Assembly (NCBI RefSeq): GCF_006345805.1
Contig: NW_021833817.1
Location: forward strand, 1-64,000
Length of the DNA stretch: 64,000 nt
Direction: 5' to 3'
Source of the DNA: Octopus sinensis
Lineage: Eukaryota
The first letter of the stretch is position 1; every line of letters begins with the position of its first letter. Under the pieces are notes generated by a model that made no database searches, was not told the origin of the DNA, and saw only the letters and a list, made by a program, of their open reading frames with translations. Made by a program: the position numbers and the translations under genes. This document shows, piece by piece, positions 1 to 63,300 of this stretch.

Positions 1-360
1 CTCATTCGACAAGACAGAGGATGTAGCCCAAAGGCGTCAACTTTATCCCCACAACGACATGGGTGAGGTCTGCAGACAGTCTGTGTTGATCGAGGAGTTT
101 TTCCAAGTCAGTTGAAGATCGACGGCAAAGAATTTTGTCCCAGTCTCGCTGAGAAAAGACATCGAAAGGGACTTCAGAGAAATTGCGTTTCCAAAGAGCA
201 AGGGCCGAATCAATATCAGAGTCCAACGATGATTCAGTAGTTTTTTCCAGAATCTTTTGGACAAGAAGATATGATCCAGAAACCGAAGAAAGAAAGGCAG
301 GAAGAGCCAAATCCATACTAGAACGGAGGCCCAGACCCCCGTGACTCACAGGAAGTTTAG
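1..360 (-). mobile_element. CRE-clade (RLE) non-LTR retrotransposon fragment, post-RT region
   Basis: Translation SHGGLGLRSSMDLALPAFLSS matches the RFGGIGIRSCADLALPCYLSS segment of the 621-aa CRE ORF at 61415-63280. Runs off the window start. Confidence 0.85.
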
Positions 361-639
361 CCTGGCACCAGGCAATAAATTTTAATTAATATTCTTTGTG
401 ATGTTTTACCACAACTTATTTAGAAGGAGAATTTATGAAGCATCTACGAAATTGTTTTTCAGATATTAAAAACAATTCTAAGGCTAAAGCTAAGTAATGA
501 TATAGTTGTCGGAGAATTGAGAGCATATCTGCTAGCTATTCATTAATTCTTTCTATTAAAGAATCTCTACCTATTATGAAAATATTTTTTCACCAAAAAA
601 CAAACGCTGCAACCACCCCATACGTATGTATACCAACTG

Positions 640-890: not shown

Positions 891-1121
891 AGTTTGGACA
901 AAATGATAGATGCCAAATAGAATCAGGTCCTAAAATAATTTTCATGGCAAGAGGGGATGGCAATGATGGGATGGCAATGATGAGGCGCCAGAAAGACAGG
1001 CGCGACAGACCCAGGTTGGAAGGCGTTCTGACGTGAGGCGAGCTAGAGAAACGCGTGAAAGGTGAAAGAACTGTGTACAAGAAGAGAAAGATCGGCCCCT
1101 CTTCTTTTTGTTAACCACGTT

Positions 1122-1511
1122 GCAGATGATGCGGAGAGAAACAACTGATTGGTAACTATGCCATTCCTTCAAGGGCTTTTATTTCTGTCGCTAGCACTGG
1201 TGAAATTTTGGCACGTTTGCCTCGTGGTGCGTGTAGAACAAAGGATATTACCGGTGGTATTCCTTAAGTTGTCAAACTTTTTGAAAGCGTGTCGACAGGG
1301 AGAAGATGCTGAAATTGCTAAGATTGATAGTATTGTTGATTTCATGGGCGTTCAGAAGAATAAATGCATCGTTTTTATCCGCAATGAAGACACAGGCATG
1401 GAAGAGAAACATTTCATATTGCTTACTATACACTTAGCTATCCTGCGTGGTGACAGTGTCGTAAAAAGACGGCAGCTCACAGATGGCCTAGCTGTACCTA
1501 AAAAATTCTTT
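1122..1511 (+). pseudogene. rpoC: Decayed fragment of bacterial RNA polymerase beta' subunit (rpoC), Chlamydiae-like
   Basis: Frameshift-corrected translation DDAE..QLIGNYAIPSRAFISVA-STGEILARLPRGACRTKDITGGIP*VVKLFE/ACRQGEDAEIAKIDSIVDFMGVQKNKCIVFIRNEDTGMEEKHFILLTIHLAILRGDSVVKRRQLTDGLAVP. It contains the beta' KDITGGLPRVAELFEAR motif and follows the chlamydial sequence as I recall it. One stop, two frameshifts, a deletion and no introns. Confidence 0.85.
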
Positions 1512-1519
1512 AACATTAA

Positions 1520-1797
1520 CTTGAAAAGAAGTTATATGTAATTGACAAATAGTTATTAACTAACTAAATTTCCGGCCTCGTAAATGGAAACACAGTTTCC
1601 ACGTACTATGGCCAAGGAAATCCTTTCGAAAAGCCACTTGGACTCGCGTGGGTCTCCCCGTTTATGGGAGATCATGCGGCCAAGCTTTTTTAGAAAGGAA
1701 AGAGACTTTTCGCCAATGACCCCGGAAGTCTCGACGGCGATGGGAGTGAACAGATACCGTTCAGAGAGTTCCTTGTACTTTCCAATCTTCAAAAGTT
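1520..1797 (-). mobile_element. 5'-truncated CRE-clade retrotransposon 3' end (RLE C-terminus)
   Basis: KYKELSERYLFTPIAVETSGVIG...GDPRESKWLFERISLAIVRGNCVSI, stop at 1556. Homologous to the end of the 61415 ORF. Confidence 0.9.
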
Positions 1798-1831
1798 GAA
1801 AAGTACATTGAAATAATAAAAACTCCCAAAA

Positions 1832-2020
1832 GGGAATGCGCCCAACCCGGAAGTACTGCAATACCGGGAGGACGCGTGATATGGAGGAAGCAAGCTTCGC
1901 AACACATACCGAGGCACAAAAATAAGCATTATATCTTGCCCCGTGTAAGGGCGTCCCAGATATAAAGCTGGAAAGAACAGATACTACACTTTGATCTTAG
2001 CCAAAAGGCCGAGAAGCGAC
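1832..2020 (-). ncRNA. U2: U2 spliceosomal snRNA gene
   Basis: Minus strand reads GTCGCTTCTCGGCCTTTTGGCTAAGATCAAAGTGTAGTATCTGTTCTT (canonical 5' end and branch-point pairing sequence), Sm site ATTTTTG near 1920, and 3' stem-loop CCGGTATTGCAGTACTTCCGG. About 189 nt. Confidence 0.97.
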
Positions 2021-9232: not shown

Positions 9233-9743
9233 TATATTAACAAACAAAATTGCATCTTTTAATGTCAATTTTTGTATGAATTGTATAAAGGAACATTTTC
9301 AGTCTTGAGCAGATCAGCTAAGTATTGTAGCTTTCTTTTCATGAAATGAGTCTTGAATGTTTTTATAATTTAAATATCCATTGATTGTATTAATCTAGTA
9401 GAATTTTTAGGAAGAAATAAAATCTTAATACAATCTAAGTTTTGAGGTATACAGTCTGCAGGACAGTGGTCTATTTGTAATAAAATTTTCTTCTTTTTAA
9501 TTATCAACTGAAGATCAACTCATCTCGTAACTAAAGGTTATGATGGGTACCCAATTTCTATAAACAATTGTATTGTTAATTATTTTAGATAACTCTTGTT
9601 GAGCTAAAATTTCTACTATATCGGGGCAAATGAACTCTGAAGGAAGTGGATAGACAATACTTTCGAATGAATTGATAATTGCTCCATTTATAAAATTTAT
9701 AGAATGGATATAAATGCTTCTGTGAAACATTAGTAAAATTACG

Positions 9744-9866
9744 GTACGATCATATTTAGTCGCAAATACCCGTTCCCATCCGAACACGGCAGTTAAGCGG
9801 TAAGCGATTACCGGCTGTTTTAGTACTTGGCTGGGTGACCGCCTGGGAACTAACAGTGTCGTACTT
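9744..9866 (+). rRNA. 5S: 5S rRNA gene, divergent, with an ~8-nt insertion at the hinge
   Basis: Terminal helix GTACGAT/GTCGTAC, loop C CCCATCCGAAC, box A AGTTAAGC, TTAGTACTTGGCTGGGTGACCGCCTGGGAA, helix V GCTGTT/AACAGT, followed by a short T run. Confidence 0.88.
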
Positions 9867-10364
9867 TAATATTTGTCTATGTTAGTGACTTTCTAATGGT
9901 AGCATGTTTGTCTATGTTGTCGAATTAACTACAAAAGACTCACAATCACCCTCCTTTAAACCGGATTTATTCCGATGCTTAAATTATCCTCAATAATTCT
10001 ATATCTCATACTAAAACGAGGCCTTTAATTAACTTAGATATCTTTAATTTCTTTCTTGTTTAAAAGTTAAATAAACATAATAAAACTATGTCATGAAAAG
10101 GCAACTCACTTTCTTTCCAAAATATCTCACTGTGTACCTCTATTCTGGCCTCTTTCACCTCCTAAAGGTCGTTCGTGACCTAACTACTGACCATAATTAA
10201 ATTATAATTAGAACGTTTTTAAATCTTTATTGAGGATAAAGGCGCTAAAGGTTAATCGCATGATCAGCTATTCCGATTGAGAATGTTCTGAAATCTAACA
10301 TTGACCCAGTACGCCATCTTTTCATTAATTATAAAAGAGCTTTTTGGGACGAATATCGCCTTGC

Positions 10365-11322
10365 GCTTGGACGGATCAAATGTTTCAATATTTTAACAAA
10401 ATCTTTGACTGCTCGGAAGGCTCGTATAACTGCAAAGAAATTGGGGCATTTTACCCTAGAATTCAATAACCGAAGTGACAGGGATTCTTTTGTGAATGAC
10501 CTGAACAATAACAAGCCATTTGGTCATGATGGCCATAAAATCTCGGAATGTTGTTTGCAACCCTCGACAGTAATTTTGAAGGGAATTCCTTTCTGGGTTT
10601 CCGAAGAAGACCTGGAGCTTTACCTAAAGGAGACTCTCCAGCCTGGCTTTTCTTTCCAACGGTTTAATAAAAATGGAAGGAATATGCCAGTTGGTAAATT
10701 GACCTTGAAGTCAAGGGCAGAAGCCACTTCACTTGTCAGAATGGGAATTGAAGTTGGTTTTCAAAAAATACGCTGTGAGTGGTTCAAAAACCCTGCTACA
10801 AGATGTTTTCGATGCCAAAAATTTGGCCACATTTCAAACTACTGCAAAGAGGTAGAAAGATGTCTTTTTTGTGGTGGAGACCATAATATGAAGTTCTGTT
10901 CAATTAAAGAAAAAACAGAGAATAAATGCATTAACTGTGGTTTAAATGGAAATTTGGCTTGTTACGGAGGCTGCCCTTCAGCTAAGGCAGGTACTGAACA
11001 ATTACGCATAAAAAGCTCAACTAGAGAGCTAAATAACAACAAATGGGTCAAAGCAGAGCCAGTCAAATCTGTATGGGAAAAATCTAAAATGTCGCATTGC
11101 TGTGAGTTCGCAACACAAACGGATGTTTATGAGGATACTATTATGTCCTCCTTTACCAAAAATTCGGAGTTTACAACTCACGTTAAGCCTCAACCATCAA
11201 CCATCGATGTTGAGCTTACCTCTATGATTAAAAAAATAATCACTATATGTTGGGAAAAAGGATTCGATATTCACAATCTGTGGCCCCTTTTCTTTGAAGG
11301 GCAAATGATTGACTATTCATGA
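10365..11322 (+). CDS. LINE ORF1 gag-like protein with three Cys/His zinc knuckles (N-truncated)
   Basis: RCFRCQKFGHISNYC, RCLFCGGDHNMKFC and KCINC...GGCP. The frame is open back to the TSD. Confidence 0.85.
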
Positions 11323-13950
11323 GTTCATATCTAACTATAATTGCGGTGAACGCACGCTCTCTAAAGAGAAGACGTGCAGAAATTGAGAACATGTTATCTA
11401 CTAATCCCGTGGACCTTTTAATTGTGAATAAAACAAAATTAAAACAACATGATGATTATTATCTGAATGGCTATTACTCCCTTGATATCAAATGGAAGTC
11501 GGGTTCGATAGCTGGAACGGGGACTTCTATATTTTACAAATCAACTTTGAGAGTGAAAAATTTGAAAATTGTTTCTGAAGAACTCTGTGAATTTGTCACA
11601 ATCGATGTTTGACTTGAAAAAACATGGATTAAAATTGGAGGGATGTATTCGAATTATCTTTCTAAATACCCATCGCTTATCAAGAATTTTTTCGCTGATA
11701 AGCACACGTCATTATCAATACTCCTTGGAGATTTGAATGCTAGATGCTCCTTCTTCGGCTGTATGGGGACTAACAGGGATGGTCTCATTCTTAAGAAACT
11801 TTCAACATCCTTTGGATTTTCAGTCTTCACATCCAAAACACCGAATCATTACTCTCCAGGAGGGTGGGACTATTTGGGCTTGGCTTTGGTATCTAGGTCT
11901 GCCCTTCACCTCTTGGAACAACCGAGTACTATCAATGACATTGGGAGTGATCATCTGCCGATCTTATATAAACTCAACGTCACCCCGTTGGAGGTTACGC
12001 CAACCTTCATACGATACAACCTTACTCCCATAAACTGGGATCACTACAGAAAAAGTTTTGCAATTTATCTGAACAAATTTGCCCCTCAACTTGAGGATAA
12101 TTCTTCAGGAGAAGATTTGGAAAAGTCGAGCAATTCTCTTATTGGCTTCATAAAGTCTTATCTAGAAATACACTCTTCTAAAATCACCTCGAACAGTAAG
12201 AAAATTCCGTTGACATGCAAAAATGTTGCAGTCCTTTAAAAAAAAACAATGCCTAAGGAACAAACTTTGTCGTTGTGTGGACTTTCACGACCGATCTGTT
12301 CTAAAAAACGAAATATTTGCCATTTCCCAGGAAATAAGAAGGTCAACAATTGCTGCTAAGAATAAAAAATGGAAAGCTGAGTGCAATAAATTACATAAAG
12401 CAAATCCAAACTTTTGGAAGGTTTTCGGAAAATTATCCACTTCAAAATCCGAGGAAGCAATACCGAAACTGTTAAATCAAGATGGATCCCCCGCTTCTCT
12501 TGAAGAAATCCCAAATATATTTGGAGACAGTCTTAAAGAAACTCAGGAGGTCAACCCGGACTTACAGTTATCTGGCCCAGCACTGTGTCATATGAAAAAA
12601 GAATTGGATGGACTCCTCACCTCGTTTCCTTTGTGCACGAAAGCTATAACTTGCAAAGACGTGGAGGACGCAATAAAATGCTCGAAGGATAATGCCCCGG
12701 GAAGAGACAAGATAACAATGCGATTGTTCAAAGAAGCACCGAGGGAACTTTATGAATATTTGAGATGTCTCTTCTCCTGTAGTCTTCATTTGGGATACGT
12801 CCCCTCCTCCTGGAAATTAACAGAGGTAAGGATGATACTAAAGCCGGGAAAACCTCGCTATTTGCCAACAAGCTATAGGCCGATAAGCCTGATTCCTACC
12901 ATCAGCCGAATCATGGAAAGGATAATGCTGTGGAGACTCTCGGAACATGTGGAGAGCAAAAATATTCTAAAAAATGTGCAGTGGGGTTTCCGCAGAAATC
13001 GCTCTTGTGGGGACTGTCATTATACGGTAAATTCGTTAATTATGAAGGCTCTGGATACCAAGGGATCTCTGACGATGGCCTGTCTTGACATTTCGAAGGC
13101 ATTCGACAGTGTATGGCATTTTGGCCTTCTGAGACATCTGGCGAGGTGTCAGATAGATAGAGAACTGTTCCTATGGTTACAGGACTTCCTCCGCGACAGA
13201 CGATCGGTGGTAAGCTTACTGAACCACGACTCGGATGAGCTAAAATTAAAAAGAGGTGTCCCCCAGGGATCAGTACTCAGTCCTCTGTTATTTAACATTG
13301 TCATGAGTAATCTACCTTCCCCAAACAATGTAAGGACGGAAATTCTAATATATGCTGATGATGTGGTCATCCTCGATGCTTCACCGAAACCTGCCTTATC
13401 TGAACAACGAATGCTGTCATATATGGAAGAGGTCGAACATTGGTGCAGAAATAACATGCTGGTTGTCGCACGTGAGAAGTCTGCTTTGTTGAGAATCACA
13501 GAAAGTAGAAATCTTAAAAATTCACCATGTCTGATTACTAACATACCACGACAACATTCAATAAAATACTTGGGATTGCAAATTGAAGAAAATGGTAAAT
13601 ACACTGAAAATGCGAAAATTCGAAAAAAGAAAGCAACAAACGCACTATTTTGCTTAAGAAAGTTAAATCTGGAACCAGATACTTTCCTTTATGTTTTTAA
13701 CACGGTGATCTTACCAGGACTTATATTTGGGAAAGAGGCATGGTACTTCTCTAGAAAGAGGAGTTCCATTATCGAGAAGTTCGAGAAAACTCGGAGACTG
13801 GCGTTAAAAATCGCCTACTCCCAAAGTCTGGAATGCCCGATTCCCCCATGGCTCGAGGCTAAAACGCCTACGGTGGGGGAAATCGTTGAAAAAGGCATCA
13901 AAAACTACAAACTCTGGTCAACAGTCACTGGGACTTACCTGCAAAGGTAA
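11319..13950 (+). pseudogene. LINE ORF2 (AP endonuclease + reverse transcriptase), disrupted
   Basis: APE motifs VNARSL, LLGDLNA and GSDHLPI. RT motifs YRPISL, DISKAFDSV, GVPQGSVLSP and YADD. In-frame TGA at 11610 and a frameshift near 12235. Confidence 0.92.
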
Positions 13951-20905: not shown

Positions 20906-21400
20906 AATGACGTTGTGAAGCGGGCGCTTAACGCCGCTGGATTTCCCTCGATGTTAGAACCGATAGGACTAGACCGTGGAGATGGAAAACGCCCTGACGG
21001 GTCGACCTTATTCCCGTTCAGGGAGGGAATGGCACTCGTGTGGGATGTTGCCTGCGTAGACTCATTTTCCTCATCATCGTTGGTTGACTCCGCTTCTCGT
21101 CCTGGATCTGCATCTGCCCTTGCCGAATCTAGGAAAACTGCAAAATATGCCTCTTTGACCGATACCTGCTGCTTCATTCCCCTGGCTTTCGAGACCAGTG
21201 GGATAATTGGACCCAAAGCCCTCCAACTCCTCTCAAAGATTGGTTTAATCATCTCGAGGAGGAGTCACGACAGTCGCGAAACGAGCTGGCTTTTTCAGCG
21301 GATATCGTTCGCGATATTACGTGGAAATTACATGTCCATCCGCTCGGCGACTCATCTAAATTAGTTAACTTCTCTATTTTACTTGTTATTTTACCTTGCT
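20906..21400 (+). mobile_element. 5'-truncated CRE-clade retrotransposon, RLE domain in frame
   Basis: NDVVKRALNAAGFPSMLEP...DGKRPDG...WDVACVD...FQRISFAILRGN, stop at 21364. Confidence 0.92.
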
Positions 21401-24420: not shown

Positions 24421-24834
24421 ATTCCAACAAGAAGAAGGTTTGCCAATTAAAGAGTATCGAACACATACTTGAACAAATAATTGTAGATAAAATGAAAACA
24501 ATTACATCTAAAGATTATGTACAACTTTATTTCTGGAATACAGGGAAATATTGCTGACACACTAAATATAGTTAACATCAAAATTTAAACAAAGAATTTT
24601 TTGGTGTTAATCCCATTTAGATTTCTGCTAATCCCATTTAGTATGGGAAATGGTATAGTATATTCTTACATTATTGCATTTGAAAATAAAAACTCTTTTG
24701 ATCCCAAAAATCATTTATATCCTGAGGAGCTCTCCATGTTTTATGTCACGCAAGTGCTGGAATCTTTTGATACCTTGGTTCGGAGTTCTGCTTAGAAAAT
24801 TCTTAATGTACATCTCGATGATATTGGCTAATGT

Positions 24835-25075
24835 CAGGCTAAACTTTCTGTGAGTCACGGAGGTCTGGGCCTCCGTTCCAGTCTTGATTTGGCTCTTCCT
24901 GCCTTTCTTTGGCGTCTGGATCATATCTCTTTGTCCAAAAGATTCTGGAAAAAAATACCTAATCATCGTTGGACTCTGATATTAATTCGGCCCTTGCACT
25001 TTGGAAACAAAATTTCTCTGAACTCCCTTCCAATGTCATTTCTCAGGAGGATTGGGACAAAATTGTCTTTCGATC
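24835..25075 (+). mobile_element. CRE-clade fragment (same subfamily as 1-360)
   Basis: SHGGLGLRSSLDLALPAFL. The DNA is closely similar to the reverse complement of 140-360. Confidence 0.85.
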
Positions 25076-25809: not shown

Positions 25810-26339
25810 TACTAGAATGAACTGCCACAATAAAAATACACAATAAAATACTAAAAAAAGATCAAAATACCAAAAAACCAAAATTTAAAATACTAGAAAA
25901 AATTAAATTTAATTAAGAAATCCTATTGAATGAAGATTATTTAATTGATAAAATAAATACAAATTTACTTGCAAAATAAACTTTATAGAAAAAATTTTAC
26001 CAGTAGTCAATTTAATTAATCTTCAAACAAATAAAAAACAAAAATATTATAAAAATAAAGTATTAATTTCAAGAAAAAATAAAAATTAACAACCAATAAT
26101 AGCAATAATTAATTGGAACCAGATTAACAACCAGAAACACAACAAAAAAATAACGTGCATAAAACGTGATATGTAATTTATCCTACATATCTACCATAAA
26201 CATAATATTATCTTAATTTCGATTTCATTAAATTTCTATTTATCCTAATTATGCCAATAAATTTAAAATATTTTTAAAATTAAATGATTTACTGTAAAAT
26301 AATTGTAATTTACTAAAAGTTAACAAAAGCATCCATAAT

Positions 26340-27420
26340 TGACGTTGCGTTGCCTCTCACGATAGCAAAGGAGATCAACTAGAGAAGCCACCGGGTCTCT
26401 CGTGTGGCGTAGCTTTTTAATGTAACTAAACGTCCAAGCATCTTTAGGAAGCGAAGCGATTTCCCACTTATTCCTCCAGTTGTCTCGACCACAATCGGAC
26501 AGAACACGAATCGGTCTCGCGGCGCTTCATATTTGCTCTCCTTTGCCCTCATCGTTTTTTCCGCGGCATACAGTCTGTCCACTGCGCTCCCGGCAATGTT
26601 AGACGGGCAGAGAGTGTCGATATAAGTTGTGTTCCAGACTAGGGGTTTCCCCTCTTCAAATGGAAAAATTGTGATCCCATCAGGACGTTTTCCATCTCCT
26701 CTGTCAAGCTCGACCAGTTCAAGTACGGCGGGGTATCCTGCAGACTCCAGGGCTAGCTTGACAATTTCGTTGGTCGCCTTGTGTCTTGGGAATCGTCCTG
26801 CACTTCTTCGATAAGAGAGAGCATGGTGTCCATAACAATCGACGATGGCCCCACACCGGAATTTGTGAGTCCGGCAAATCTCCACTCCAAGTCTGATGCA
26901 GATGCTGACAGTATCGTCGTCAAGGTGGGTTCCGACACTATCAACGGGGAGTGCGTTGATCTAAGCTCCACTCGATTCGCATCTTTCAGTCACTAGACAG
27001 GCACGTCTGTGTTGATTTGATTGATTCCGAGGGCTCTCATATTTATCCTCGCAGATGGTCCTGTAACAATATTTCTTCTCAGGCATCATCTCCCTCGAAT
27101 GCTTTATGTCTGTGATTTCAGATGATTCAGTTTGGAGAATCATCCTGATCAGCAGTCGGCTGGAGTCCAAAGAGGATAGATATGCGGGCAAGCTAGATCT
27201 TTCGGAGAAGGGATTCCCAGTCCGCCCAGGTTAACAGTTAGGGTAGCTTGGTCCCACCCTTGGTCGTTGAATTTCACATTGGTGATGCGTTCAATGGTGG
27301 TTTGAAAGACACACTCAATATCGTCGAGCTGTTGCATTTTCAGGTAGTAGGGTGCACCCGAAGAACGTAATTCAGCTTCTGTGCTAACAAGGTGTTTCTT
27401 AGCAGGGAAGTATGTACGTA
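26340..27420 (-). mobile_element. Degenerate CRE-clade retrotransposon
   Basis: LTVNLGGLGIPSPKDLA, CGAIVDCYGHHALS...RHKATNEIV, DGKRPDG and WLL*LISFAIVRGN. Confidence 0.88.
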
Positions 27421-35757: not shown

Positions 35758-36299
35758 CTAGACCCTATGCGGCCTTCGGCCGCGGTATTTTTGATACCCT
35801 AACTTTCTAGAGAGGTATTTTTCCAAAACATTCTCTTGGGCTCAAAAAAATAAAAATCAAAAAATTAAGGAAATTTAAGTTATTACAACTTTTTTACCCT
35901 AACCTAACCCTACCCCTAACCTAACCCTAACTCTACCCCTAACCTAACCCTACCCCTAACCCAACCCTAACCCTACCCCTAACCTAACCCTACCCCTAAC
36001 CCACCCCTAACCTAACCCTACCCCTAACCTAACCCTACCCCTAACCTACCCCTAACCTAACCCTAACCCCTAACCTAACCCTACTCCTAACCTAACCCCT
36101 AACCTAACCCTACTCCTAACCTAACCCCTAACCTAACCCTACCCCTAACCTAACCCTAACCTAACCCTACCCCTAACCTAACCCTTAAATCAACAAGATC
36201 TATAAGCTTCCTCGATACAAAAGAATCGCAACTCTCGACCATTTTTAGCAATGTAGGCTGCGGAATTCTTGAAAGTGAAACTTTCAGCATATCGCTTGA
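35758..36299 (-). mobile_element. Helitron-like non-autonomous insert carrying the telomere-like array
   Basis: Minus-strand hairpin GCGGCC-GAA-GGCCGC (35769-35783), then CTAG|T at 35758. The 5' A|TC candidate at 36299 is uncertain. Confidence 0.6.
35897..36185. repeat. Interstitial telomere-like compound repeat, ~17-bp unit CCCTAACCTAACCCTAC
   Basis: About 290 bp of mixed CCCTAA / CCTAA / CCCTAC units. Confidence 0.95.
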
Positions 36300-41062: not shown

Positions 41063-41292
41063 TTTTTGGTTTTAGACGAGCTGTAAAAAGCGCATATAAT
41101 TAATTCGCGGCTGACGACATAATCGAATAGGCATTGCCGCGAACAACGGCCAAACCTATTCTTTGTCGAAGCCATGTGGGGTCCCTCCAGTCGTTTTTTT
41201 TATATGAGCGATTTACTCCGATTTCTTTAAGGAATGAATTTCAGCCGCGAATTAATTATATGCGCTTTTTACAGCTCGTCTAAAACCAAAAA
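41063..41292. repeat. Foldback element / MITE with perfect 52-bp inverted arms
   Basis: 41063-41114 is the exact reverse complement of 41241-41292. Confidence 0.9.
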
Positions 41293-53582: not shown

Positions 53583-54908
53583 TTATGAATCATTATATGT
53601 GATTTTTCATGCGGTTCTTTAAGGGCACTTCAAAAAGGTGAAAAAGACACAGGCACTGACCTCTGATCTAGATTGCGAAAAATTTTTGATTTTTACTCCA
53701 GTTAACGGGATTCTTAAAGGATCTTTCTCTTTGCCAGGGACCTCTTCTTCTCTCTTTGCATTCAAAGAAAAGAACAGTTTCATTCGGCGATTATTATCGG
53801 GAATTACTTCTAAAGACTTGCAGCCAATGCTTCTGCATATTTCGGTGTCTTTTTTGGCATAAACCGGAGTCGTACTGTATTCAGTTGTTGATCATCACGA
53901 TCATATCCGCAGAGCATTGCAGTTTTTGCTGTGTCCAGTGTACACCTGACGTTTCATAAAACGCCTGTTACAGTTTAACAGTCACTTGGGCCGTACCAAT
54001 AACCGCAGCAGGTCTCCAAGGTTAGCAGCTTCTGGTCAATAGATAAACGCTGGTAAGGAAAGTCAGCAAACTAGATCTATACCTTTTGTAAAAGGATTGG
54101 CTCTATGGGTTGAGTCTTTACTGCTGTTTTTTTGATTGCCGCGTAAGTGGTAGTTGAGCATTGAGTGGTAGGACAGTGAACAACCAAAATAGAACTGGCA
54201 CGGAGAAGGGGAATCTGACTGTGTAATAACACCAAAGCAGTGCGATAGCCGTAAACGGTTTTGACTTTGATTTTAGTCACGACCAACTCTCCGTCAAAAT
54301 TTCGTATTTATGCTATTTTTCAACATGAACTTGTTTCAAGCAATCACGGAGAGTAATACGAGTAATTTTATTTCTTATTCATACAGCAAAAATATCCAAT
54401 TGTTACATTGAAAATTTTGTTCGTAATTGTTCAGAATTGACGCGCATTTCAACATTTTCTGTAAATAAAATTTACTGAACGGTGACTTCCTAAAGAAATA
54501 CAAGTGCCTTCTGACATATTCTCTGTTGAGGATTTTCCAAATTACGCGTTGCCAAATGACTTATAATTTAATGCCTCTCAATCACTGGTTTCACAATGCT
54601 CCCTTGTTAAAAACAAGTTTGTACTCAGTTCTGGCAAAAATATTTTCTCAGGAGATTTAGAATAATTCTCCCCAATGTAAGATTGTAAAAATCAGAAGAC
54701 CTGAAAATATATTTGGCCATTATGTACCAATTTAAAGATAACCAGTCCATGTCAAAATGAAATTAAAATTGTTGTCTTATTAAGAAATTTCTAGTATTCA
54801 ATGCCTTCGCCTTAAAAAAATTATTTTTTACTTATTTTTGGTAAATTAAAAAAATGTTGTGTTGTAAAAGAAAATAACAATAACATTTAAGTAGTCTTGG
54901 TAACCACA

Positions 54909-55994: not shown

Positions 55995-56700
55995 CACTAC
56001 GATGTCCTCGACTTACATGATGAGGTCCTTAAAACCTTCCCCCCAAAAAAATTAAAAAAAAATTTTCTGCATTTTGGTTAAAATGAACAACTACAATGTC
56101 CTCGACTTACATGATGAAGTCCTTAAAACCTTCCCCCCAAAAAAAATTAAAAAAAAATTTTCTGCATTTTGGTTAAAATGAACAACTACGATGTCCTCGA
56201 CTTACATGATGAAGTCCTTAAAACCTTCCCCCCAAAAAAAATTAAAAAAAAATTTTCTGCATTTTGGTTAAAATGAACAACTACAATGTCCTCGACTTAC
56301 ATGATGAAGTCCTTAAAACCTTCCCCCCAAAAAAAATTAAAAAAAAATTTTCCGCATTTTGGTTAAAATGAACAACTACATGTCCTCGACTTACATGATG
56401 AAGTCCTTAAAACCTTCCCCCCAAAAAAATTAAAAAAAAATTTTCTGCATTTTGGTTAAAATGAACAACTACAATGTCCTCAACTTACATGATGAAGTCC
56501 TTAAAACCTTCCCCTCCAAAAAAAATTAAAAAAAAATTTTCTGCATTTTGGTTAAAATGAACAACTACAATGTCCTCGACTTACATGATGAAGTCCTTAA
56601 AACCTTCCCCCCAAAAAATCAAAAAATTATTTTCTGCATTTTGATTAAAATGAACAACGCGAATGTCCTCGACATTCATGATGAGGTCCATTAAAACCTT
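55995..56700. repeat. Tandem array of ~94-bp units (~7.5 copies) inside the Helitron
   Basis: Unit AACTAC.ATGTCCTCGACTTACATGATGAAGTCCTTAAAACCTTCCCCCCAAAA...TTTTCTGCATTTTGGTTAAAATGAAC. Nearly identical except at homopolymers. The last unit is diverged. Confidence 0.97.
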
Positions 56701-56915
56701 CAAGGCAAAAATCTCACGTATTAAGAATATCCTTGATGAAAACGACAGCGAGAATATTAACAATGATGAACTCCCAATTATTCGCGATAAAAAAATTCAA
56801 TTCATCCTATGTTTTTCTCTTTAAAATTAAATGCATATATCATTATCGACCATGAATCAAAATTAAAGCTATTATCATATTTGACTTTGACAGAATGTGC
56901 AATCACAGATTGCAC

Positions 56916-61328: not shown

Positions 61329-63300
61329 TTTTTTTTTTTTTTTTTTAAACAGACAGACACAACAAAGAATTTAAAGCAATTGGGTGGCTAAGGGAATTGT
61401 CGAGAGCCTGAGGGTCAGCTCAACGATGCCGCGCTGCGTATTGAGTGGCAGTTTCCGCGGAGCACAGCAACCGAGATTCGCTGGAACAGCCAGCTCGTCT
61501 CCCTCCGGTCGTTTGTTTTTGTGGAGATTTTTCTACCAATGGCGGTGAGGAGTTGAGTCGCAGCCTTTCCGACGATTCCAGAGGTTTCGAAGGCGAGGGG
61601 GGCAAACTCAAAAGCGTCCGAAATACACCGGTATTTCGTCCTCTTTGTCTCTTCAGCCAGCGCACTGGCGGAACCCGGGTTTGCGACAGTCCTGGGAAGC
61701 AATGTCGCCGAAAAAGAGTCGACACACGTGGCATCCCAAACCAGGGACTTGCCTTCCCTAAAAGGAAAGGTCGTCATCCCGTCGGGACGCTTGCCGTCGC
61801 TCCGGGAAAGGCCGACTGGCTCTAGGGTGGAAGGGAAACCAGCCGACTCTAGAGCCCTCCTCACAACGTCATTCAGATGAGTGTGACGGGGAATTCTCCC
61901 GGCACTCTTCTTACACGACAAGGCGTGCAAGCCGTTTGACGAAATTGAGGACCCGCACCGGCAAGGGTGGGGCTGGCAGATGTCCAAACCCAATCGTAAG
62001 CTGATCCCAATCCGCAAGGATTCGTCGTCCAGTAGTAACCCCGTACTAGGAGTGGGGAGAGCTTTGAGCCAGTCACCCGTGTGCGGCTGACAGGCGCAGT
62101 TAAGGGTGGCCAGCTGGAGTTGGTCCGACTTGGAGCGAAGTTTTCGTAATGTGTTCGAGCAGAGAATTTCGTCCCAGCCCCTTTGAACTGAAGGGATCGT
62201 GGGAAAATCAAGGTCGAGTGAGCACCACGTACGGCATGCAGATGAGAATTCCGAGAGCTCATTAAGTTCGAGAGAGGGAAGTAGAACTGAGCAAACGGAA
62301 TTCCTGGAAGCCGACATGGATGAGAGATAGCAGGGTAGGGCCAGGTCCGCACAAGAGCGGATCCCGATCCCCCCGAAGCGAGTTGGTAAACTGGCACGGG
62401 TAAAACCGCCACCAGTGAACCTCAAATTGAGGTGGAATGTTAGCGATTGGTGGACAAGATTATCGATTCTGGATAATGAGTCTGTGGCAGCGAAACACGG
62501 GGAGGAACGGAGAATATAGGTCAGTCTGGGGACGAAAAGAAAGTTCTTCAACAAGAAAAACGCAAGATGCGAGCCAAGCCCACGGATCCGATCAGTGAGT
62601 AGTTTAATTTCGTCCCATTTAGACGATAAGGCATTTTCTATGCCTTCAGCGGAAATTGGAGAGCCCAAGATAACTAGATCGCTGGTGGGCGTTAGCCTTA
62701 ACCCAACGATCAGGCTGCTGAGAGAGGAGAATGTGTTGCGGAGAGCGGCGGGGGCAAGAGAAATGTTTACGAGTTCGCATTTTTCGCCGTTAAGAGATAG
62801 TCCGATCTTGGAGAAACCGGAAGTGATTCTCTTAACGTCTTCCATAACGACCTCTGTAGGTCCACCGATCGTCACGTCGTCCAGGTACCAGAAGTTAACA
62901 GTGGAAGAAAGGTTCCGTGCAATGTGGTCAACGGAGAGGGCAAACAGCAATGGGCCCAGTGGGTCACCCTGCTGAATGCCGCATTCTGACATGATGATCT
63001 GATCATGGATCAGAAGGCAGCTTGGGGCAGAGTATGCCAGCTTTACAATTGGGAAGAGAACGGGGCAACGTGCCGAGACCACTTCGAGCAGATGGTCCCG
63101 GCGGACGCAGTTGAATGCGTTGCTGACGTCCAGCTTCACGATGAACTTGCAGTCTTCTGGCTTTGACTGGACAAGTTGGCGAGTGCCGTGCGCGAGAATT
63201 TCGCAGCCACCTTGGACGCCGACACCGTACTGGAAAGGGAGAAACTCCAGACTCAGGGGGGGAACCACCCTGCGGGACATTATCTTGGCCGAGAGTCTCC
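61329..63300 (-). mobile_element. CRE-clade RLE non-LTR retrotransposon, 5'-truncated at the RT N-terminus, poly(A)-tailed
   Basis: Uninterrupted 621-aa ORF, ~70-nt 3' UTR, 18-nt poly(A) (T run 61329-61346). No clear TSD. Confidence 0.95.
61415..63280 (-). CDS. CRE RT + CCHC zinc finger + restriction-like endonuclease
   Basis: PFQYGVG, KLDVSNAFN, GIQQGDPLGP, WYLDD, CRCG...HALSC, RHTHLND, KRPDG, WDATCVD and FQRISVAVLRGN. Confidence 0.95.
   Translation of the reverse strand: MSRRVVPPLSLEFLPFQYGVGVQGGCEILAHGTRQLVQSKPEDCKFIVKLDVSNAFNCVRRDHLLEVVSARCPVLFPIVKLAYSAPSCLLIHDQIIMSECGIQQGDPLGPLLFALSVDHIARNLSSTVNFWYLDDVTIGGPTEVVMEDVKRITSGFSKIGLSLNGEKCELVNISLAPAALRNTFSSLSSLIVGLRLTPTSDLVILGSPISAEGIENALSSKWDEIKLLTDRIRGLGSHLAFFLLKNFLFVPRLTYILRSSPCFAATDSLSRIDNLVHQSLTFHLNLRFTGGGFTRASLPTRFGGIGIRSCADLALPCYLSSMSASRNSVCSVLLPSLELNELSEFSSACRTWCSLDLDFPTIPSVQRGWDEILCSNTLRKLRSKSDQLQLATLNCACQPHTGDWLKALPTPSTGLLLDDESLRIGISLRLGLDICQPHPCRCGSSISSNGLHALSCKKSAGRIPRHTHLNDVVRRALESAGFPSTLEPVGLSRSDGKRPDGMTTFPFREGKSLVWDATCVDSFSATLLPRTVANPGSASALAEETKRTKYRCISDAFEFAPLAFETSGIVGKAATQLLTAIGRKISTKTNDRRETSWLFQRISVAVLRGNCHSIRSAASLS

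What the first reader, a model, noticed from the sequence alone, without database searches (positions are those of the whole stretch)
1122..1511. Fossil chlamydial-type rpoC DNA integrated in an animal-like nuclear genome
Seen in sequence: a gapped frame with the beta' signature ARLPRG..TKDITGG, followed by IAKID.IVDF.GVQKNK...TGMEE.H...T.HL...RGDSV....LTDGL.VP. Established knowledge, from memory: this continuation is characteristic of Chlamydiae RpoC (IAKIDGVVDFKGIQKNK..TGMEEEHLIPLTKHLIVQRGDSV.KGQQLTDGLVVP) rather than generic bacteria, plastids or eukaryotic Pol I-III. The piece is intronless and decayed (stop, two frameshifts, deletion). It sits between eukaryotic repeats, a CRE 3' end and the U2 gene, so it looks integrated and old rather than contaminating. 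Inference: a chlamydial endosymbiont or pathogen once reached this host's germ line and left nuclear DNA inserts.
Basis: partly seen in the sequence, partly recalled or inferred. Interest (0 to 1): 0.85.

Follow-up and report, generated by a model that had tools for sequence, protein, structure and literature searches.

The report
Decayed chlamydial rpoC fragment in octopus DNA
About 400 bases of a bacterial RNA polymerase gene (rpoC) of chlamydial type lie broken and mutated between octopus repeats, so it is most likely a dead relic of chlamydial DNA once captured by the octopus germ line, though one short fragment in one assembly does not prove this.

Summary
Window 1115-1519 (+) is a fragment of bacterial rpoC (RNA polymerase beta', about 135 of roughly 1,400 codons). 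A DNA profile of Chlamydiota rpoC hits only this site in the 64 kb (E 3e-70).

The lineage call also holds. The best matches, at 51-62% amino-acid identity, are Chlamydiota. Other PVC phyla reach 46% or less, and solved beta' structures score far lower. The fragment groups with Chlamydiota in 200 of 200 bootstrap trees, but the family is unresolved.

It is a pseudogene. It carries a TAA stop inside the LPRV motif, +2 and +1 frameshifts and a 15-nt deletion. At nucleotide sites invariant in 23 chlamydial sequences, 12% have changed, mostly GC to AT.

The host is an octopus: window repeats are 94-97% identical to Octopus sinensis DNA. A 5'-truncated octopus retrotransposon tail ends 12-14 bp from the fragment, a U2 gene lies 310 bp away, and another retrotransposon lies on the left.

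The best reading is an old nuclear insert of chlamydial DNA with no function. The age estimate (10^7 to 10^8 years) is an inference.

Not tested: read support for the junctions, presence in other octopods, and other inserts elsewhere in the genome. This is a new member of a known kind, bacterial DNA inserted into an animal nucleus. Interest is moderate.

The parts
1115..1519 (+). Pseudogenised fragment of chlamydial-type rpoC (RNA polymerase beta'). It covers about 135 codons, matching roughly residues 1085-1220 of solved beta' chains.
   Evidence: nhmmer with a DNA profile of 21 Chlamydiota rpoC pieces aligns to 1122-1509 (envelope 1115-1519) with E 3.4e-70, the only hit in the window. Protein profile hits, PDB hits and a frameshift-aware alignment agree.
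1135..1136 (+). +2 insertion that shifts the reading frame
1189..1190 (+). Site of a 15-nt (5-codon) deletion relative to all chlamydial sequences (FISV-----ASTGEILARLP)
1265..1267 (+). In-frame TAA stop replacing the Arg codon of the GGLPRV motif (DITGG is invariant in all 11 sequences of the alignment; LPRV varies in one)
1286..1286 (+). +1 insertion that shifts the frame from frame 2 to frame 3
1532..1791 (-). Host flank: a 5'-truncated 3' tail of an octopus non-LTR retrotransposon that encodes a restriction-like endonuclease. Its 3' end lies 12-14 bp from the rpoC piece. It is not part of the bacterial fragment.
   Evidence: 93% identical over 260 bp to a copy in Octopus sinensis VCDQ01000492.1, where the element continues further 5'. 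Homologous C-termini occur at 61421-61636, 21134-21358, 26328-26543 and 41121-41237. The full C-terminal ORF has RT, CCHC and RLE motifs.
1831..2020 (-). Host flank: full-length U2 snRNA gene
   Evidence: Rfam RF00004, 154 bits, model positions 1-192
2..377 (-). Host flank on the left: the middle part of another retrotransposon of the same kind. It runs off the window start. Positions 131-377 are repeated at 24822-25064.
   Evidence: read directly from the translation
1795..1821 (+). Possible, unproven further remnant of the same rpoC insert on the far side of the retrotransposon tail. VEKYIEIIK resembles NDKHIEIIV, which lies 25 residues downstream in RpoC.
   Evidence: Empirical p = 0.014 against random 39-mers of the window, but the test was chosen after the match was seen. 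It is not significant by profile HMM (E 2.9) or by free local alignment (8 of 100 shuffles).

Best explanation
A short piece of genomic DNA from a member of the phylum Chlamydiota, about 400 bp from the 3' third of rpoC, was inserted into the nuclear genome of an octopus lineage. It has since evolved as junk.

It does nothing now. It covers under a tenth of the gene, has a stop codon and frameshifts, and has no bacterial neighbours.

The likeliest route is the one accepted for mitochondrial and Wolbachia DNA in nuclei: fragments from lysed intracellular bacteria are ligated into a chromosome break by end-joining repair in a germ-line cell. This step is inferred, not shown.

Later, a 5'-truncated copy of an octopus non-LTR retrotransposon landed at its right edge, possibly removing or splitting part of the insert.

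Shown: identity as rpoC, chlamydial affinity, the lesions, neutral-type decay, and host sequence on both sides in this assembly.

Inferred: germ-line entry, the repair mechanism, the order of events, and an age of the order of 10^7 to 10^8 years.
For: **Identity.** PDB phmmer matches only bacterial beta'. NCBIfam rpoC_TIGR gives E 1e-13, against 0.0024 for cyanobacterial/plastid rpoC2. The DNA profile gives E 3.4e-70.

**Lineage.**
- An exhaustive phmmer search of 1.84 billion representatives ranks chlamydia-like fragments first, at 125 and 116 bits and 59-62% identity. The next group scores about 97 bits or less at 45%.
- P0006, one of these, lies on a contig that its record labels uncultured Chlamydiales.
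- In the GTDB species scan, 23 loci have 51-62% identity. Apart from two with no taxon label and three labelled Verrucomicrobia, their record titles name Chlamydiota lineages (Simkaniaceae, Parachlamydiales, Rhabdochlamydia and others). Auribacterota, Verrucomicrobiota, Kiritimatiellia and Lentisphaerae reach 46% or less.
- In the neighbour-joining tree, the window plus these 23 sequences are monophyletic in 200 of 200 bootstraps.

**Decay in the host.**
- A stop, two frameshifts and a 15-nt deletion are present.
- 13 of 45 amino-acid columns invariant in 23 chlamydial sequences are changed.
- 15 of 124 invariant nucleotide sites are changed, which gives a Jukes-Cantor distance (d) of 0.13 with a 95% interval of 0.07-0.22.
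- GC-to-AT changes outnumber AT-to-GC changes 10 to 3. The fragment's GC content is 0.41, between the donors (median 0.49) and the host window (0.35).

**Host context.**
- Window repeats are 94-97% identical to Octopus sinensis DNA.
- A retrotransposon tail 93% identical to an O. sinensis copy ends 12-14 bp from the fragment.
- U2 lies 310 bp away, and another retrotransposon lies at 2-377.

**Isolation.** No other rpoB, rpoC or neighbouring-gene similarity is found in the 64 kb.
Against: - Everything rests on one assembly. I could not examine reads, coverage or a second assembly, because four small window ORFs within 2 kb of the fragment are not on record in the contig index.
- No orthologous copy in another octopod could be checked, so inheritance and age are untested.
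- Only one fragment was seen.
- The tree outgroups are PVC phyla only. Exclusion of other phyla rests on score gaps.
- The papers searched say nothing about chlamydiae in the octopus germ line or about such transfers.
Confidence: 0.8

Rival explanations
1. Assembly artefact or contamination: reads from a chlamydia living in the sequenced tissue were joined by mistake into an octopus contig.
For: Chlamydiae are intracellular and could be co-sequenced with host tissue. Error-prone long-read assemblies do break rpoC into many false ORFs, as in the metagenome contigs L001 and L002.
Against: - The piece is only about 400 bp with host sequence on both sides, so two false joins would be needed within 400 bp.
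- The damage is not of the sequencing-error type. A TAA replaces an Arg codon, a clean 15-nt deletion is present, and there are 15 substitutions at sites invariant in 23 chlamydial sequences, biased toward AT.
- rpoC is a single-copy essential gene, so a living bacterium cannot carry it in this state (established knowledge).
- No other bacterial sequence adjoins it.
Confidence: 0.06
2. The fragment belongs to, or was carried by, a mobile element (for example captured or transduced by a retrotransposon). It would then exist in many copies in octopus genomes, so this site is not where bacterial DNA first entered.
For: A retrotransposon 3' end lies within 12-14 bp of the fragment's right edge, and the window is packed with transposable elements.
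Against: - The O. sinensis copy of that retrotransposon tail loses similarity at the element's end and has unrelated sequence where the window has rpoC.
- The fragment is single-copy in the 64 kb.
- It lies antisense and 3' of the element, which is not the layout produced by template switching at the 5' end of a cDNA (inference from the known mechanism of target-primed reverse transcription).
- No protein like it was called in any eukaryotic assembly in the protein collection.
Confidence: 0.1
3. The fragment has been co-opted and is still functional, as an exon, a small protein (ORF 1149-1541) or a regulatory RNA.
For: An uninterrupted 130-codon ORF runs through the second half of the fragment.
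Against: - The first 40 codons of that ORF are out of frame with rpoC.
- Invariant residues are lost at about the rate expected without selection. Changes at first and second codon positions do not differ significantly (9/47 against 6/77, Fisher p = 0.09).
- No gene with this product is on record.
- Pfam finds no family.
Confidence: 0.03

Closest known systems
Nuclear Wolbachia DNA inserts ('nuwts') in insects and filarial nematodes (from established knowledge, e.g. Dunning Hotopp et al. 2007)
   Same: DNA of an obligate intracellular bacterium is found inside an animal chromosome. It is mostly non-functional, fragmentary and decaying, and is flanked by host repeats. The presumed route is through the germ line and end-joining repair.
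   Different: The donor phylum is Chlamydiota, not Alphaproteobacteria, and the host is a cephalopod mollusc. Only one piece of about 400 bp has been seen so far, and no living symbiont is known that would explain it. Nuwts are often recent and nearly identical to the resident Wolbachia. This piece is old, at 62% amino-acid and about 71% nucleotide identity to the nearest sampled relative.
NUMTs and NUPTs (organelle DNA fragments in nuclear genomes)
   Same: These are short, promoterless, non-functional fragments of bacterial-type DNA captured at chromosome breaks. They drift toward host base composition and accumulate stops and indels.
   Different: The source is not an organelle. rpoC is absent from animal mitochondria, and the plastid/cyanobacterial rpoC2 model fits poorly (E 0.0024 against 1e-13).
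Chlamydia-derived genes in plants and algae (Archaeplastida) and in some anaerobic protists
   Same: The donor phylum is chlamydial and the recipient is a eukaryotic nucleus.
   Different: Those are intact, expressed, selected genes acquired over a billion years ago. This is a dead fragment of an informational gene in an animal, with no sign of use.
Utopia and Keno, non-LTR retrotransposons that target U2 snRNA genes (PMC4640811)
   Same: An element encoding a restriction-like endonuclease lies next to a U2 gene.
   Different: Utopia inserts inside U2 at nucleotide 38/39 and is followed by U2 nucleotides 39 onward. Here the U2 is intact, the truncated element lies about 40 bp downstream of it, and it is followed by the rpoC piece. 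This concerns the neighbour, not the finding itself.

Membership tests
Bacterial RNA polymerase beta' subunit gene (rpoC) | Significant sequence similarity to beta', collinear with its C-terminal third | tested here: met
   PDB phmmer matches only beta' chains, residues about 1085-1220, E 4e-11. TIGR02386 gives E 1e-13. The profile HMM gives E 8e-15 and 3e-28.
Bacterial RNA polymerase beta' subunit gene (rpoC) | Conserved motif K-T-K-D-I-T-G-G-L-P-R-V | tested here: met
   The window reads RTKDITGGIP*V at 1235-1270. The motif is recognisable but carries L-to-I and R-to-stop changes.
Bacterial RNA polymerase beta' subunit gene (rpoC) | Complete, uninterrupted coding sequence (about 1,400 codons) next to rpoB | tested here: not met
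   Only about 135 codons are present, with one stop, two frameshifts and one deletion. No rpoB or further rpoC is found in the 64 kb. It is a gene fragment, not a gene.
Chlamydiota origin | Closest relatives among all bacteria are Chlamydiota, with a clear gap to other phyla | tested here: met
   Loci L003-L026 at 51-62% identity are almost all Chlamydiota by record title; three are labelled Verrucomicrobia and two carry no taxon. Other PVC phyla reach 46% or less. The exhaustive search gives 125 bits for the top hit, which resembles a fragment on a contig labelled Chlamydiales, against 97 bits or less for the next group. Solved beta' structures from other phyla give 46 bits or less.
Chlamydiota origin | Falls inside or beside the Chlamydiota clade in a tree | tested here: met
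   The neighbour-joining tree on about 135 columns gives 200 of 200 bootstraps for the window plus 23 chlamydial sequences. The window sits on a long branch and the family is unresolved, with sister groups varying among replicates. Caveats: the outgroups are PVC phyla only and no likelihood method was used.
Bacterial DNA integrated in an animal nuclear genome (lateral transfer, nuwt-like) | Bacterial segment flanked on both sides by host sequence on one contig | tested here: met
   An octopus retrotransposon tail lies at 1532-1791, U2 at 1831-2020, a retrotransposon at 2-377, and repeats 94-97% identical to O. sinensis lie throughout the window.
Bacterial DNA integrated in an animal nuclear genome (lateral transfer, nuwt-like) | Signs of evolution inside the host: loss of constraint and a shift toward host base composition | tested here: met
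   12% of sites invariant in the chlamydial sequences are changed, GC-to-AT outnumbers AT-to-GC 10 to 3, and fragment GC is 0.41 against a donor median of 0.49 and a host value of 0.35. CpG content was not informative.
Bacterial DNA integrated in an animal nuclear genome (lateral transfer, nuwt-like) | Junctions confirmed by spanning reads or PCR, with coverage equal to the flanks | not testable with these tools
   No reads were available, and no second assembly was reachable.
Bacterial DNA integrated in an animal nuclear genome (lateral transfer, nuwt-like) | Inherited: present at the same site in other individuals or related species | not testable with these tools
   No searchable collection of cephalopod genomes was on hand. 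Only one 21-kb piece of O. sinensis, from an unrelated locus, could be fetched.
Utopia (U2-targeting non-LTR retrotransposon), as a label for the neighbouring element | Insertion inside U2 at nucleotide 38/39, with U2 nucleotides 39 onward as the 3' flank | tested here: not met
   The U2 is intact (model positions 1-192). The element lies downstream of it, and its 3' flank is the rpoC piece.

The most novel reading that the evidence does not exclude
The fragment is one surviving trace of an ancient, germ-line-associated chlamydial infection or symbiosis in the octopod lineage. Under this reading, octopod genomes hold further decayed chlamydial pieces from the same donor, shared at orthologous sites across species. 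They would form a datable fossil record of a chlamydia-cephalopod association that nobody has described.
Probability: 0.25. Interest if true: 0.7.

Novelty: new member of a known kind. Interest (0 to 1): 0.45.

Why it matters
Transfers of bacterial DNA into animal chromosomes are well documented mainly for Wolbachia in arthropods and nematodes. A chlamydial piece in a cephalopod would extend both the donor range and the host range.

Chlamydiae are obligate intracellular bacteria. A germ-line insert would therefore imply that a chlamydia once lived in or next to octopus germ cells. That would be a record of a past host-microbe association that cannot be recovered any other way.

If the piece is shared among octopod species, it also gives a minimum date for that association.

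On the practical side, it shows that short, decayed bacterial pieces pass contamination screens. Such pieces should not be removed from assemblies as contaminants.

On its own, one non-functional 400-bp fragment changes little. Its value depends on confirmation and on finding more.

Tried and rejected
1. **Leftward extension of the rpoC piece to 1016.** A frameshift-aware pairwise alignment extended that far, and an anchored shuffle test gave p of about 0.02-0.045. Neither the DNA profile nor the protein profile supports it, and a free local search was no better than shuffles. I do not count it. The GC-rich stretch 944-1115 remains unidentified.
2. **Rightward extension past 1517.** There is none.
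3. **Other bacterial pieces in the window.** Six-frame pieces of two 12-kb chlamydial rpoB-rpoC loci hit nothing else. A general screen of all window ORFs against bacterial families was prepared but not run, because it would have needed more library searches than the cap allows.
4. **Short broken homologues as possible eukaryotic inserts.** The hits P0004, P0006 and similar turned out to lie on frameshift-ridden long-read metagenome contigs with whole rpoB-rpoC operons, so they are bacterial.
5. **Naming the best hits through cluster look-up.** This gave no taxonomy.
6. **Finding the locus in another assembly.** Exact look-up of four nearby ORFs found nothing on record. A 25-mer of the decayed piece was absent from the metagenome contigs.
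7. **Identifying the retrotransposon tail by protein search.** The search gave no candidates and Pfam found nothing. It was identified instead by comparison within the window and with O. sinensis DNA.
8. **Utopia-type U2 targeting as an explanation of the layout.** This was rejected.
9. **CpG depletion as a mark of residence in an animal genome.** It was uninformative, because the window itself is not depleted.
10. **Literature on octopus-chlamydia transfers.** Nothing was found.

Full report
**1. What is in the sequence**

Window 1100-1560 was read and translated in three frames.
- Frame 2 gives GEKQLIGNYAIPSRAFISVASTGEILARLPRGACRTKDITGGIP*VVKLFE.
- After a one-base shift, frame 3 gives ACRQGEDAEIAKIDSIVDFMGVQKNKCIVFIRNEDTGMEEKHFILLTIHLAILRGDSVVKRRQLTDGLAVPKKFFNI.

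**2. Is it more than chance, and what gene is it?**

- A phmmer search of the stitched peptide against all solved structures returned only bacterial RNA polymerase beta' chains. The matches align collinearly to residues about 1085-1220, with a best E-value of 4e-11.
- NCBIfam gives rpoC (TIGR02386) at E 1e-13. The cyanobacterial/plastid rpoC2 model reaches only 0.0024.
- Pfam's fragmented Rpb1 domain models do not reach threshold on this short piece.
- A DNA profile built from 21 Chlamydiota rpoC segments hits the window once, at 1122-1509 (envelope 1115-1519), with E 3.4e-70.
- A protein profile hits the two frame pieces at E 8e-15 and 3e-28, in collinear profile positions 123-169 and 171-253.

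The observation and its coordinates are confirmed.

**3. Extent and lesions**

The firm limits are 1115-1519, about 135 of roughly 1,400 codons. Relative to every chlamydial sequence the piece carries:
- a +2 insertion at about 1135-1136
- a 15-nt deletion after 1189
- a TAA at 1265-1267 in place of the arginine of GGLPRV
- a +1 insertion at about 1286
- possibly a 1-nt loss in the A-run at 1500-1505

A pairwise alignment suggested a leftward extension to 1016 (anchored shuffle p about 0.02-0.045). Neither profile supports it, so I leave it out. There is no rightward extension.

Six-frame pieces of two 12-kb chlamydial rpoB-rpoC loci match nothing else in the 64 kb.

**4. Lineage**

- The word-indexed protein search found 13 relatives at 55-63% identity. 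Several looked broken themselves. Two that I looked up lie on long-read metagenome contigs carrying whole but frameshift-ridden rpoB-rpoC operons. One of these is recorded as an uncultured Chlamydiales genome (L025). They are bacteria with assembly errors, not eukaryotic inserts.
- An exhaustive phmmer search of 1.84 billion representatives ranks such chlamydia-like fragments first, at 125, 116 and 106 bits. The next group scores about 97 bits or less at 45% identity or lower.
- A scan of one genome per GTDB species returned 80 loci. The 23 with 51-62% identity (L003-L024 and L026) mostly name Chlamydiota lineages in their titles: Simkaniaceae, Parachlamydiales, Parachlamydiaceae, Rhabdochlamydia, Chlamydiia. 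Two carry no taxon and three are labelled Verrucomicrobia.
- Identity then drops to 46% or less for Auribacterota, Verrucomicrobiota, Kiritimatiellia and Lentisphaerae.
- In a neighbour-joining tree with Kimura distances, the window sequence plus these 23 form a clade in 200 of 200 bootstraps. The three 'Verrucomicrobia' sequences fall inside it. The window sits on a long branch and its sister group is unstable, so no family can be named.

**5. Is it a fossil?**

I used sites where all 23 chlamydial sequences carry the same nucleotide. All of these are first or second codon positions.
- The window differs at 15 of 124 such sites: 9 of 47 first positions and 6 of 77 second positions. The two rates are not significantly different (Fisher p = 0.09).
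- 13 of 45 invariant amino-acid columns are changed.
- GC-to-AT changes outnumber AT-to-GC changes 10 to 3.
- The fragment's GC content is 0.41. The homologous chlamydial pieces have a median of 0.49, and the window as a whole has 0.35.

A living bacterium could not carry its only rpoC in this state, and the changes are substitutions of the kind expected from unconstrained drift in an AT-rich host.

The Jukes-Cantor distance at these sites is 0.13 (95% interval 0.07-0.22). With assumed neutral rates of 1 to 5e-9 per site per year, this gives roughly 15 to 220 million years. That is an inference, because the cephalopod rate is not known to me and cannot be derived from these tools.

**6. Host and context**

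- A LINE reverse-transcriptase ORF in the window has a 91%-identical partial match named as an Octopus sinensis protein.
- The 21 kb around that gene in the O. sinensis assembly shares many repeats with the window at 94-97% nucleotide identity. The window therefore comes from an Octopus genome, or one very close to it.
- To the right, 1532-1791 (-) is 93% identical to an O. sinensis repeat copy. That copy continues further 5', whereas the window copy is truncated.
- Its reading frame is the C-terminus of a family found at least four more times in the window. A fuller copy at 61415-63280 (-) shows reverse transcriptase, a CCHC motif and restriction-like endonuclease motifs.
- The element's 3' end lies 12-14 bp from the last rpoC-like codon.
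- A full-length U2 snRNA gene lies at 1831-2020 (-). The layout is not that of U2-targeting Utopia elements, which insert at U2 nucleotide 38/39.
- To the left, 2-377 (-) is the middle part of another element of the same kind, partly repeated at 24822-25064.
- The stretch 944-1115 is GC-rich (0.52-0.58) and unidentified.

**7. Best explanation**

This is a nuclear insert of chlamydial DNA, now a dead fragment. The likely mechanism is capture of a stray bacterial DNA fragment during end-joining repair of a chromosome break in a germ-line cell, by analogy with NUMTs and Wolbachia inserts. That is inference from established knowledge.

The retrotransposon tail still has an open frame over 81 codons and is 93% identical to a paralogue. 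It probably arrived later, at or in the right edge of the insert.

The 39 bp between that tail and U2 read KVEKYIEIIK. This resembles NDKHIEIIV, which lies 25 residues further along RpoC, on the same strand and in the right order. Against random 39-mers of the window the match has p = 0.014. I noticed it before testing it, and it is not significant by profile. I therefore record it only as a possible far side of an insert split by the retrotransposon.

**8. Rivals**

- *Chimeric assembly or contamination.* This is unlikely, because two false joins within 400 bp would be needed and the damage is not of the sequencing-error type. Only reads can exclude it.
- *Carriage by a mobile element.* This is not supported. 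The O. sinensis copy of the neighbouring element does not continue into rpoC-like sequence, and the piece is single-copy in the window. A genome-wide search is still needed.
- *Co-option.* There is no support. The 130-codon ORF 1149-1541 is out of frame with rpoC for its first third, and no such product is on record.

**9. Known or new?**

Three full-text searches found no paper linking octopus or cephalopods with chlamydial gene transfer. The phenomenon is of a known kind, bacterial DNA in an animal nucleus. The donor-host pair appears not to have been described.

**10. Verdict**

Integration is strongly suggested by decay and context, but it has not been verified at the read or population level. 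The wider story, a germ-line chlamydial symbiont and multiple inserts, is untested. Interest is moderate.

Noticed in passing
window 1792-1830 (+): The 39 bp between the retrotransposon tail and U2 read KVEKYIEIIK, resembling RpoC NDKHIEIIV 25 residues beyond the break, collinear and on the same strand. Empirical p = 0.014 against random window 39-mers, but the test was post hoc and the profile HMM gives E 2.9. It may be the far side of an insert split by the retrotransposon.
   Followed up: partly
window 944-1115: A GC-rich stretch (0.52-0.58 against a window mean of 0.35) lies directly left of the rpoC piece and includes a short duplicated GGATGGCAATGATG motif. No match was found to rpoC, to NCBIfam families or to other parts of the window. 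Its origin is unknown.
   Followed up: partly
window 1831-2020 (-) and 1532-1791 (-): A full-length U2 snRNA is followed about 40 bp downstream, on the same strand, by a 5'-truncated retrotransposon tail. This could be a U2-retrotransposon chimeric retrocopy made by template switching, or simply a U2 gene with a nearby insertion. It is not the Utopia-type layout.
   Followed up: partly
window 61415-63280 (-); also 21134-21358 (+), 26328-26543 (-), 41121-41237 (-), 2-377 (-): There are several copies of a non-LTR retrotransposon family encoding a restriction-like endonuclease. One ORF of 621 codons has reverse transcriptase, CCHC and endonuclease motifs and looks intact over its 3' half.
   Followed up: partly
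window 54055-54294 (+): A 240-bp piece matching eukaryotic 28S rRNA (model positions 1906-2346) lies inside a dispersed repeat. The same repeat occurs in O. sinensis L083 6712-6936 at 94.7% identity. It may be rRNA sequence carried along by an rDNA-targeting element.
   Followed up: no
window 9742-9867 (+): A full-length 5S rRNA gene (77 bits) stands alone in an AT-rich region.
   Followed up: no
window 55996-56701: A 95-bp satellite has 7.5 copies at 95% match. The same satellite is present in O. sinensis L083 18996-20356.
   Followed up: no
window 35897-36185: An interstitial telomere-like array consists of degenerate CCCTAA/CCTAA units.
   Followed up: no
window 10405-13950 (+): A LINE is apparently nearly intact, with a zinc-knuckle ORF1 (10405-11322), an AP-endonuclease (11643-12239) and a reverse transcriptase (12223-13950). 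It is 95-97% identical to copies in O. sinensis.
   Followed up: partly
loci L003, L006, L024 (GenBank JAFEGU010000104.1, JAFEGI010000015.1, JAGWKU010000019.1): Three metagenome-assembled genomes labelled Verrucomicrobia or Verrucomicrobiota carry rpoC that falls inside the Chlamydiota clade, next to Rhabdochlamydia for two of them. Their taxonomic labels look wrong or outdated.
   Followed up: partly
loci L001, L002 (ENA contigs of 2.03 Mb and 294 kb): In these long-read metagenome assemblies of chlamydiae, rpoB and rpoC are split into many short false ORFs by frameshift errors. Such fragments populate protein databases and can be mistaken for pseudogenes or inserts.
   Followed up: yes
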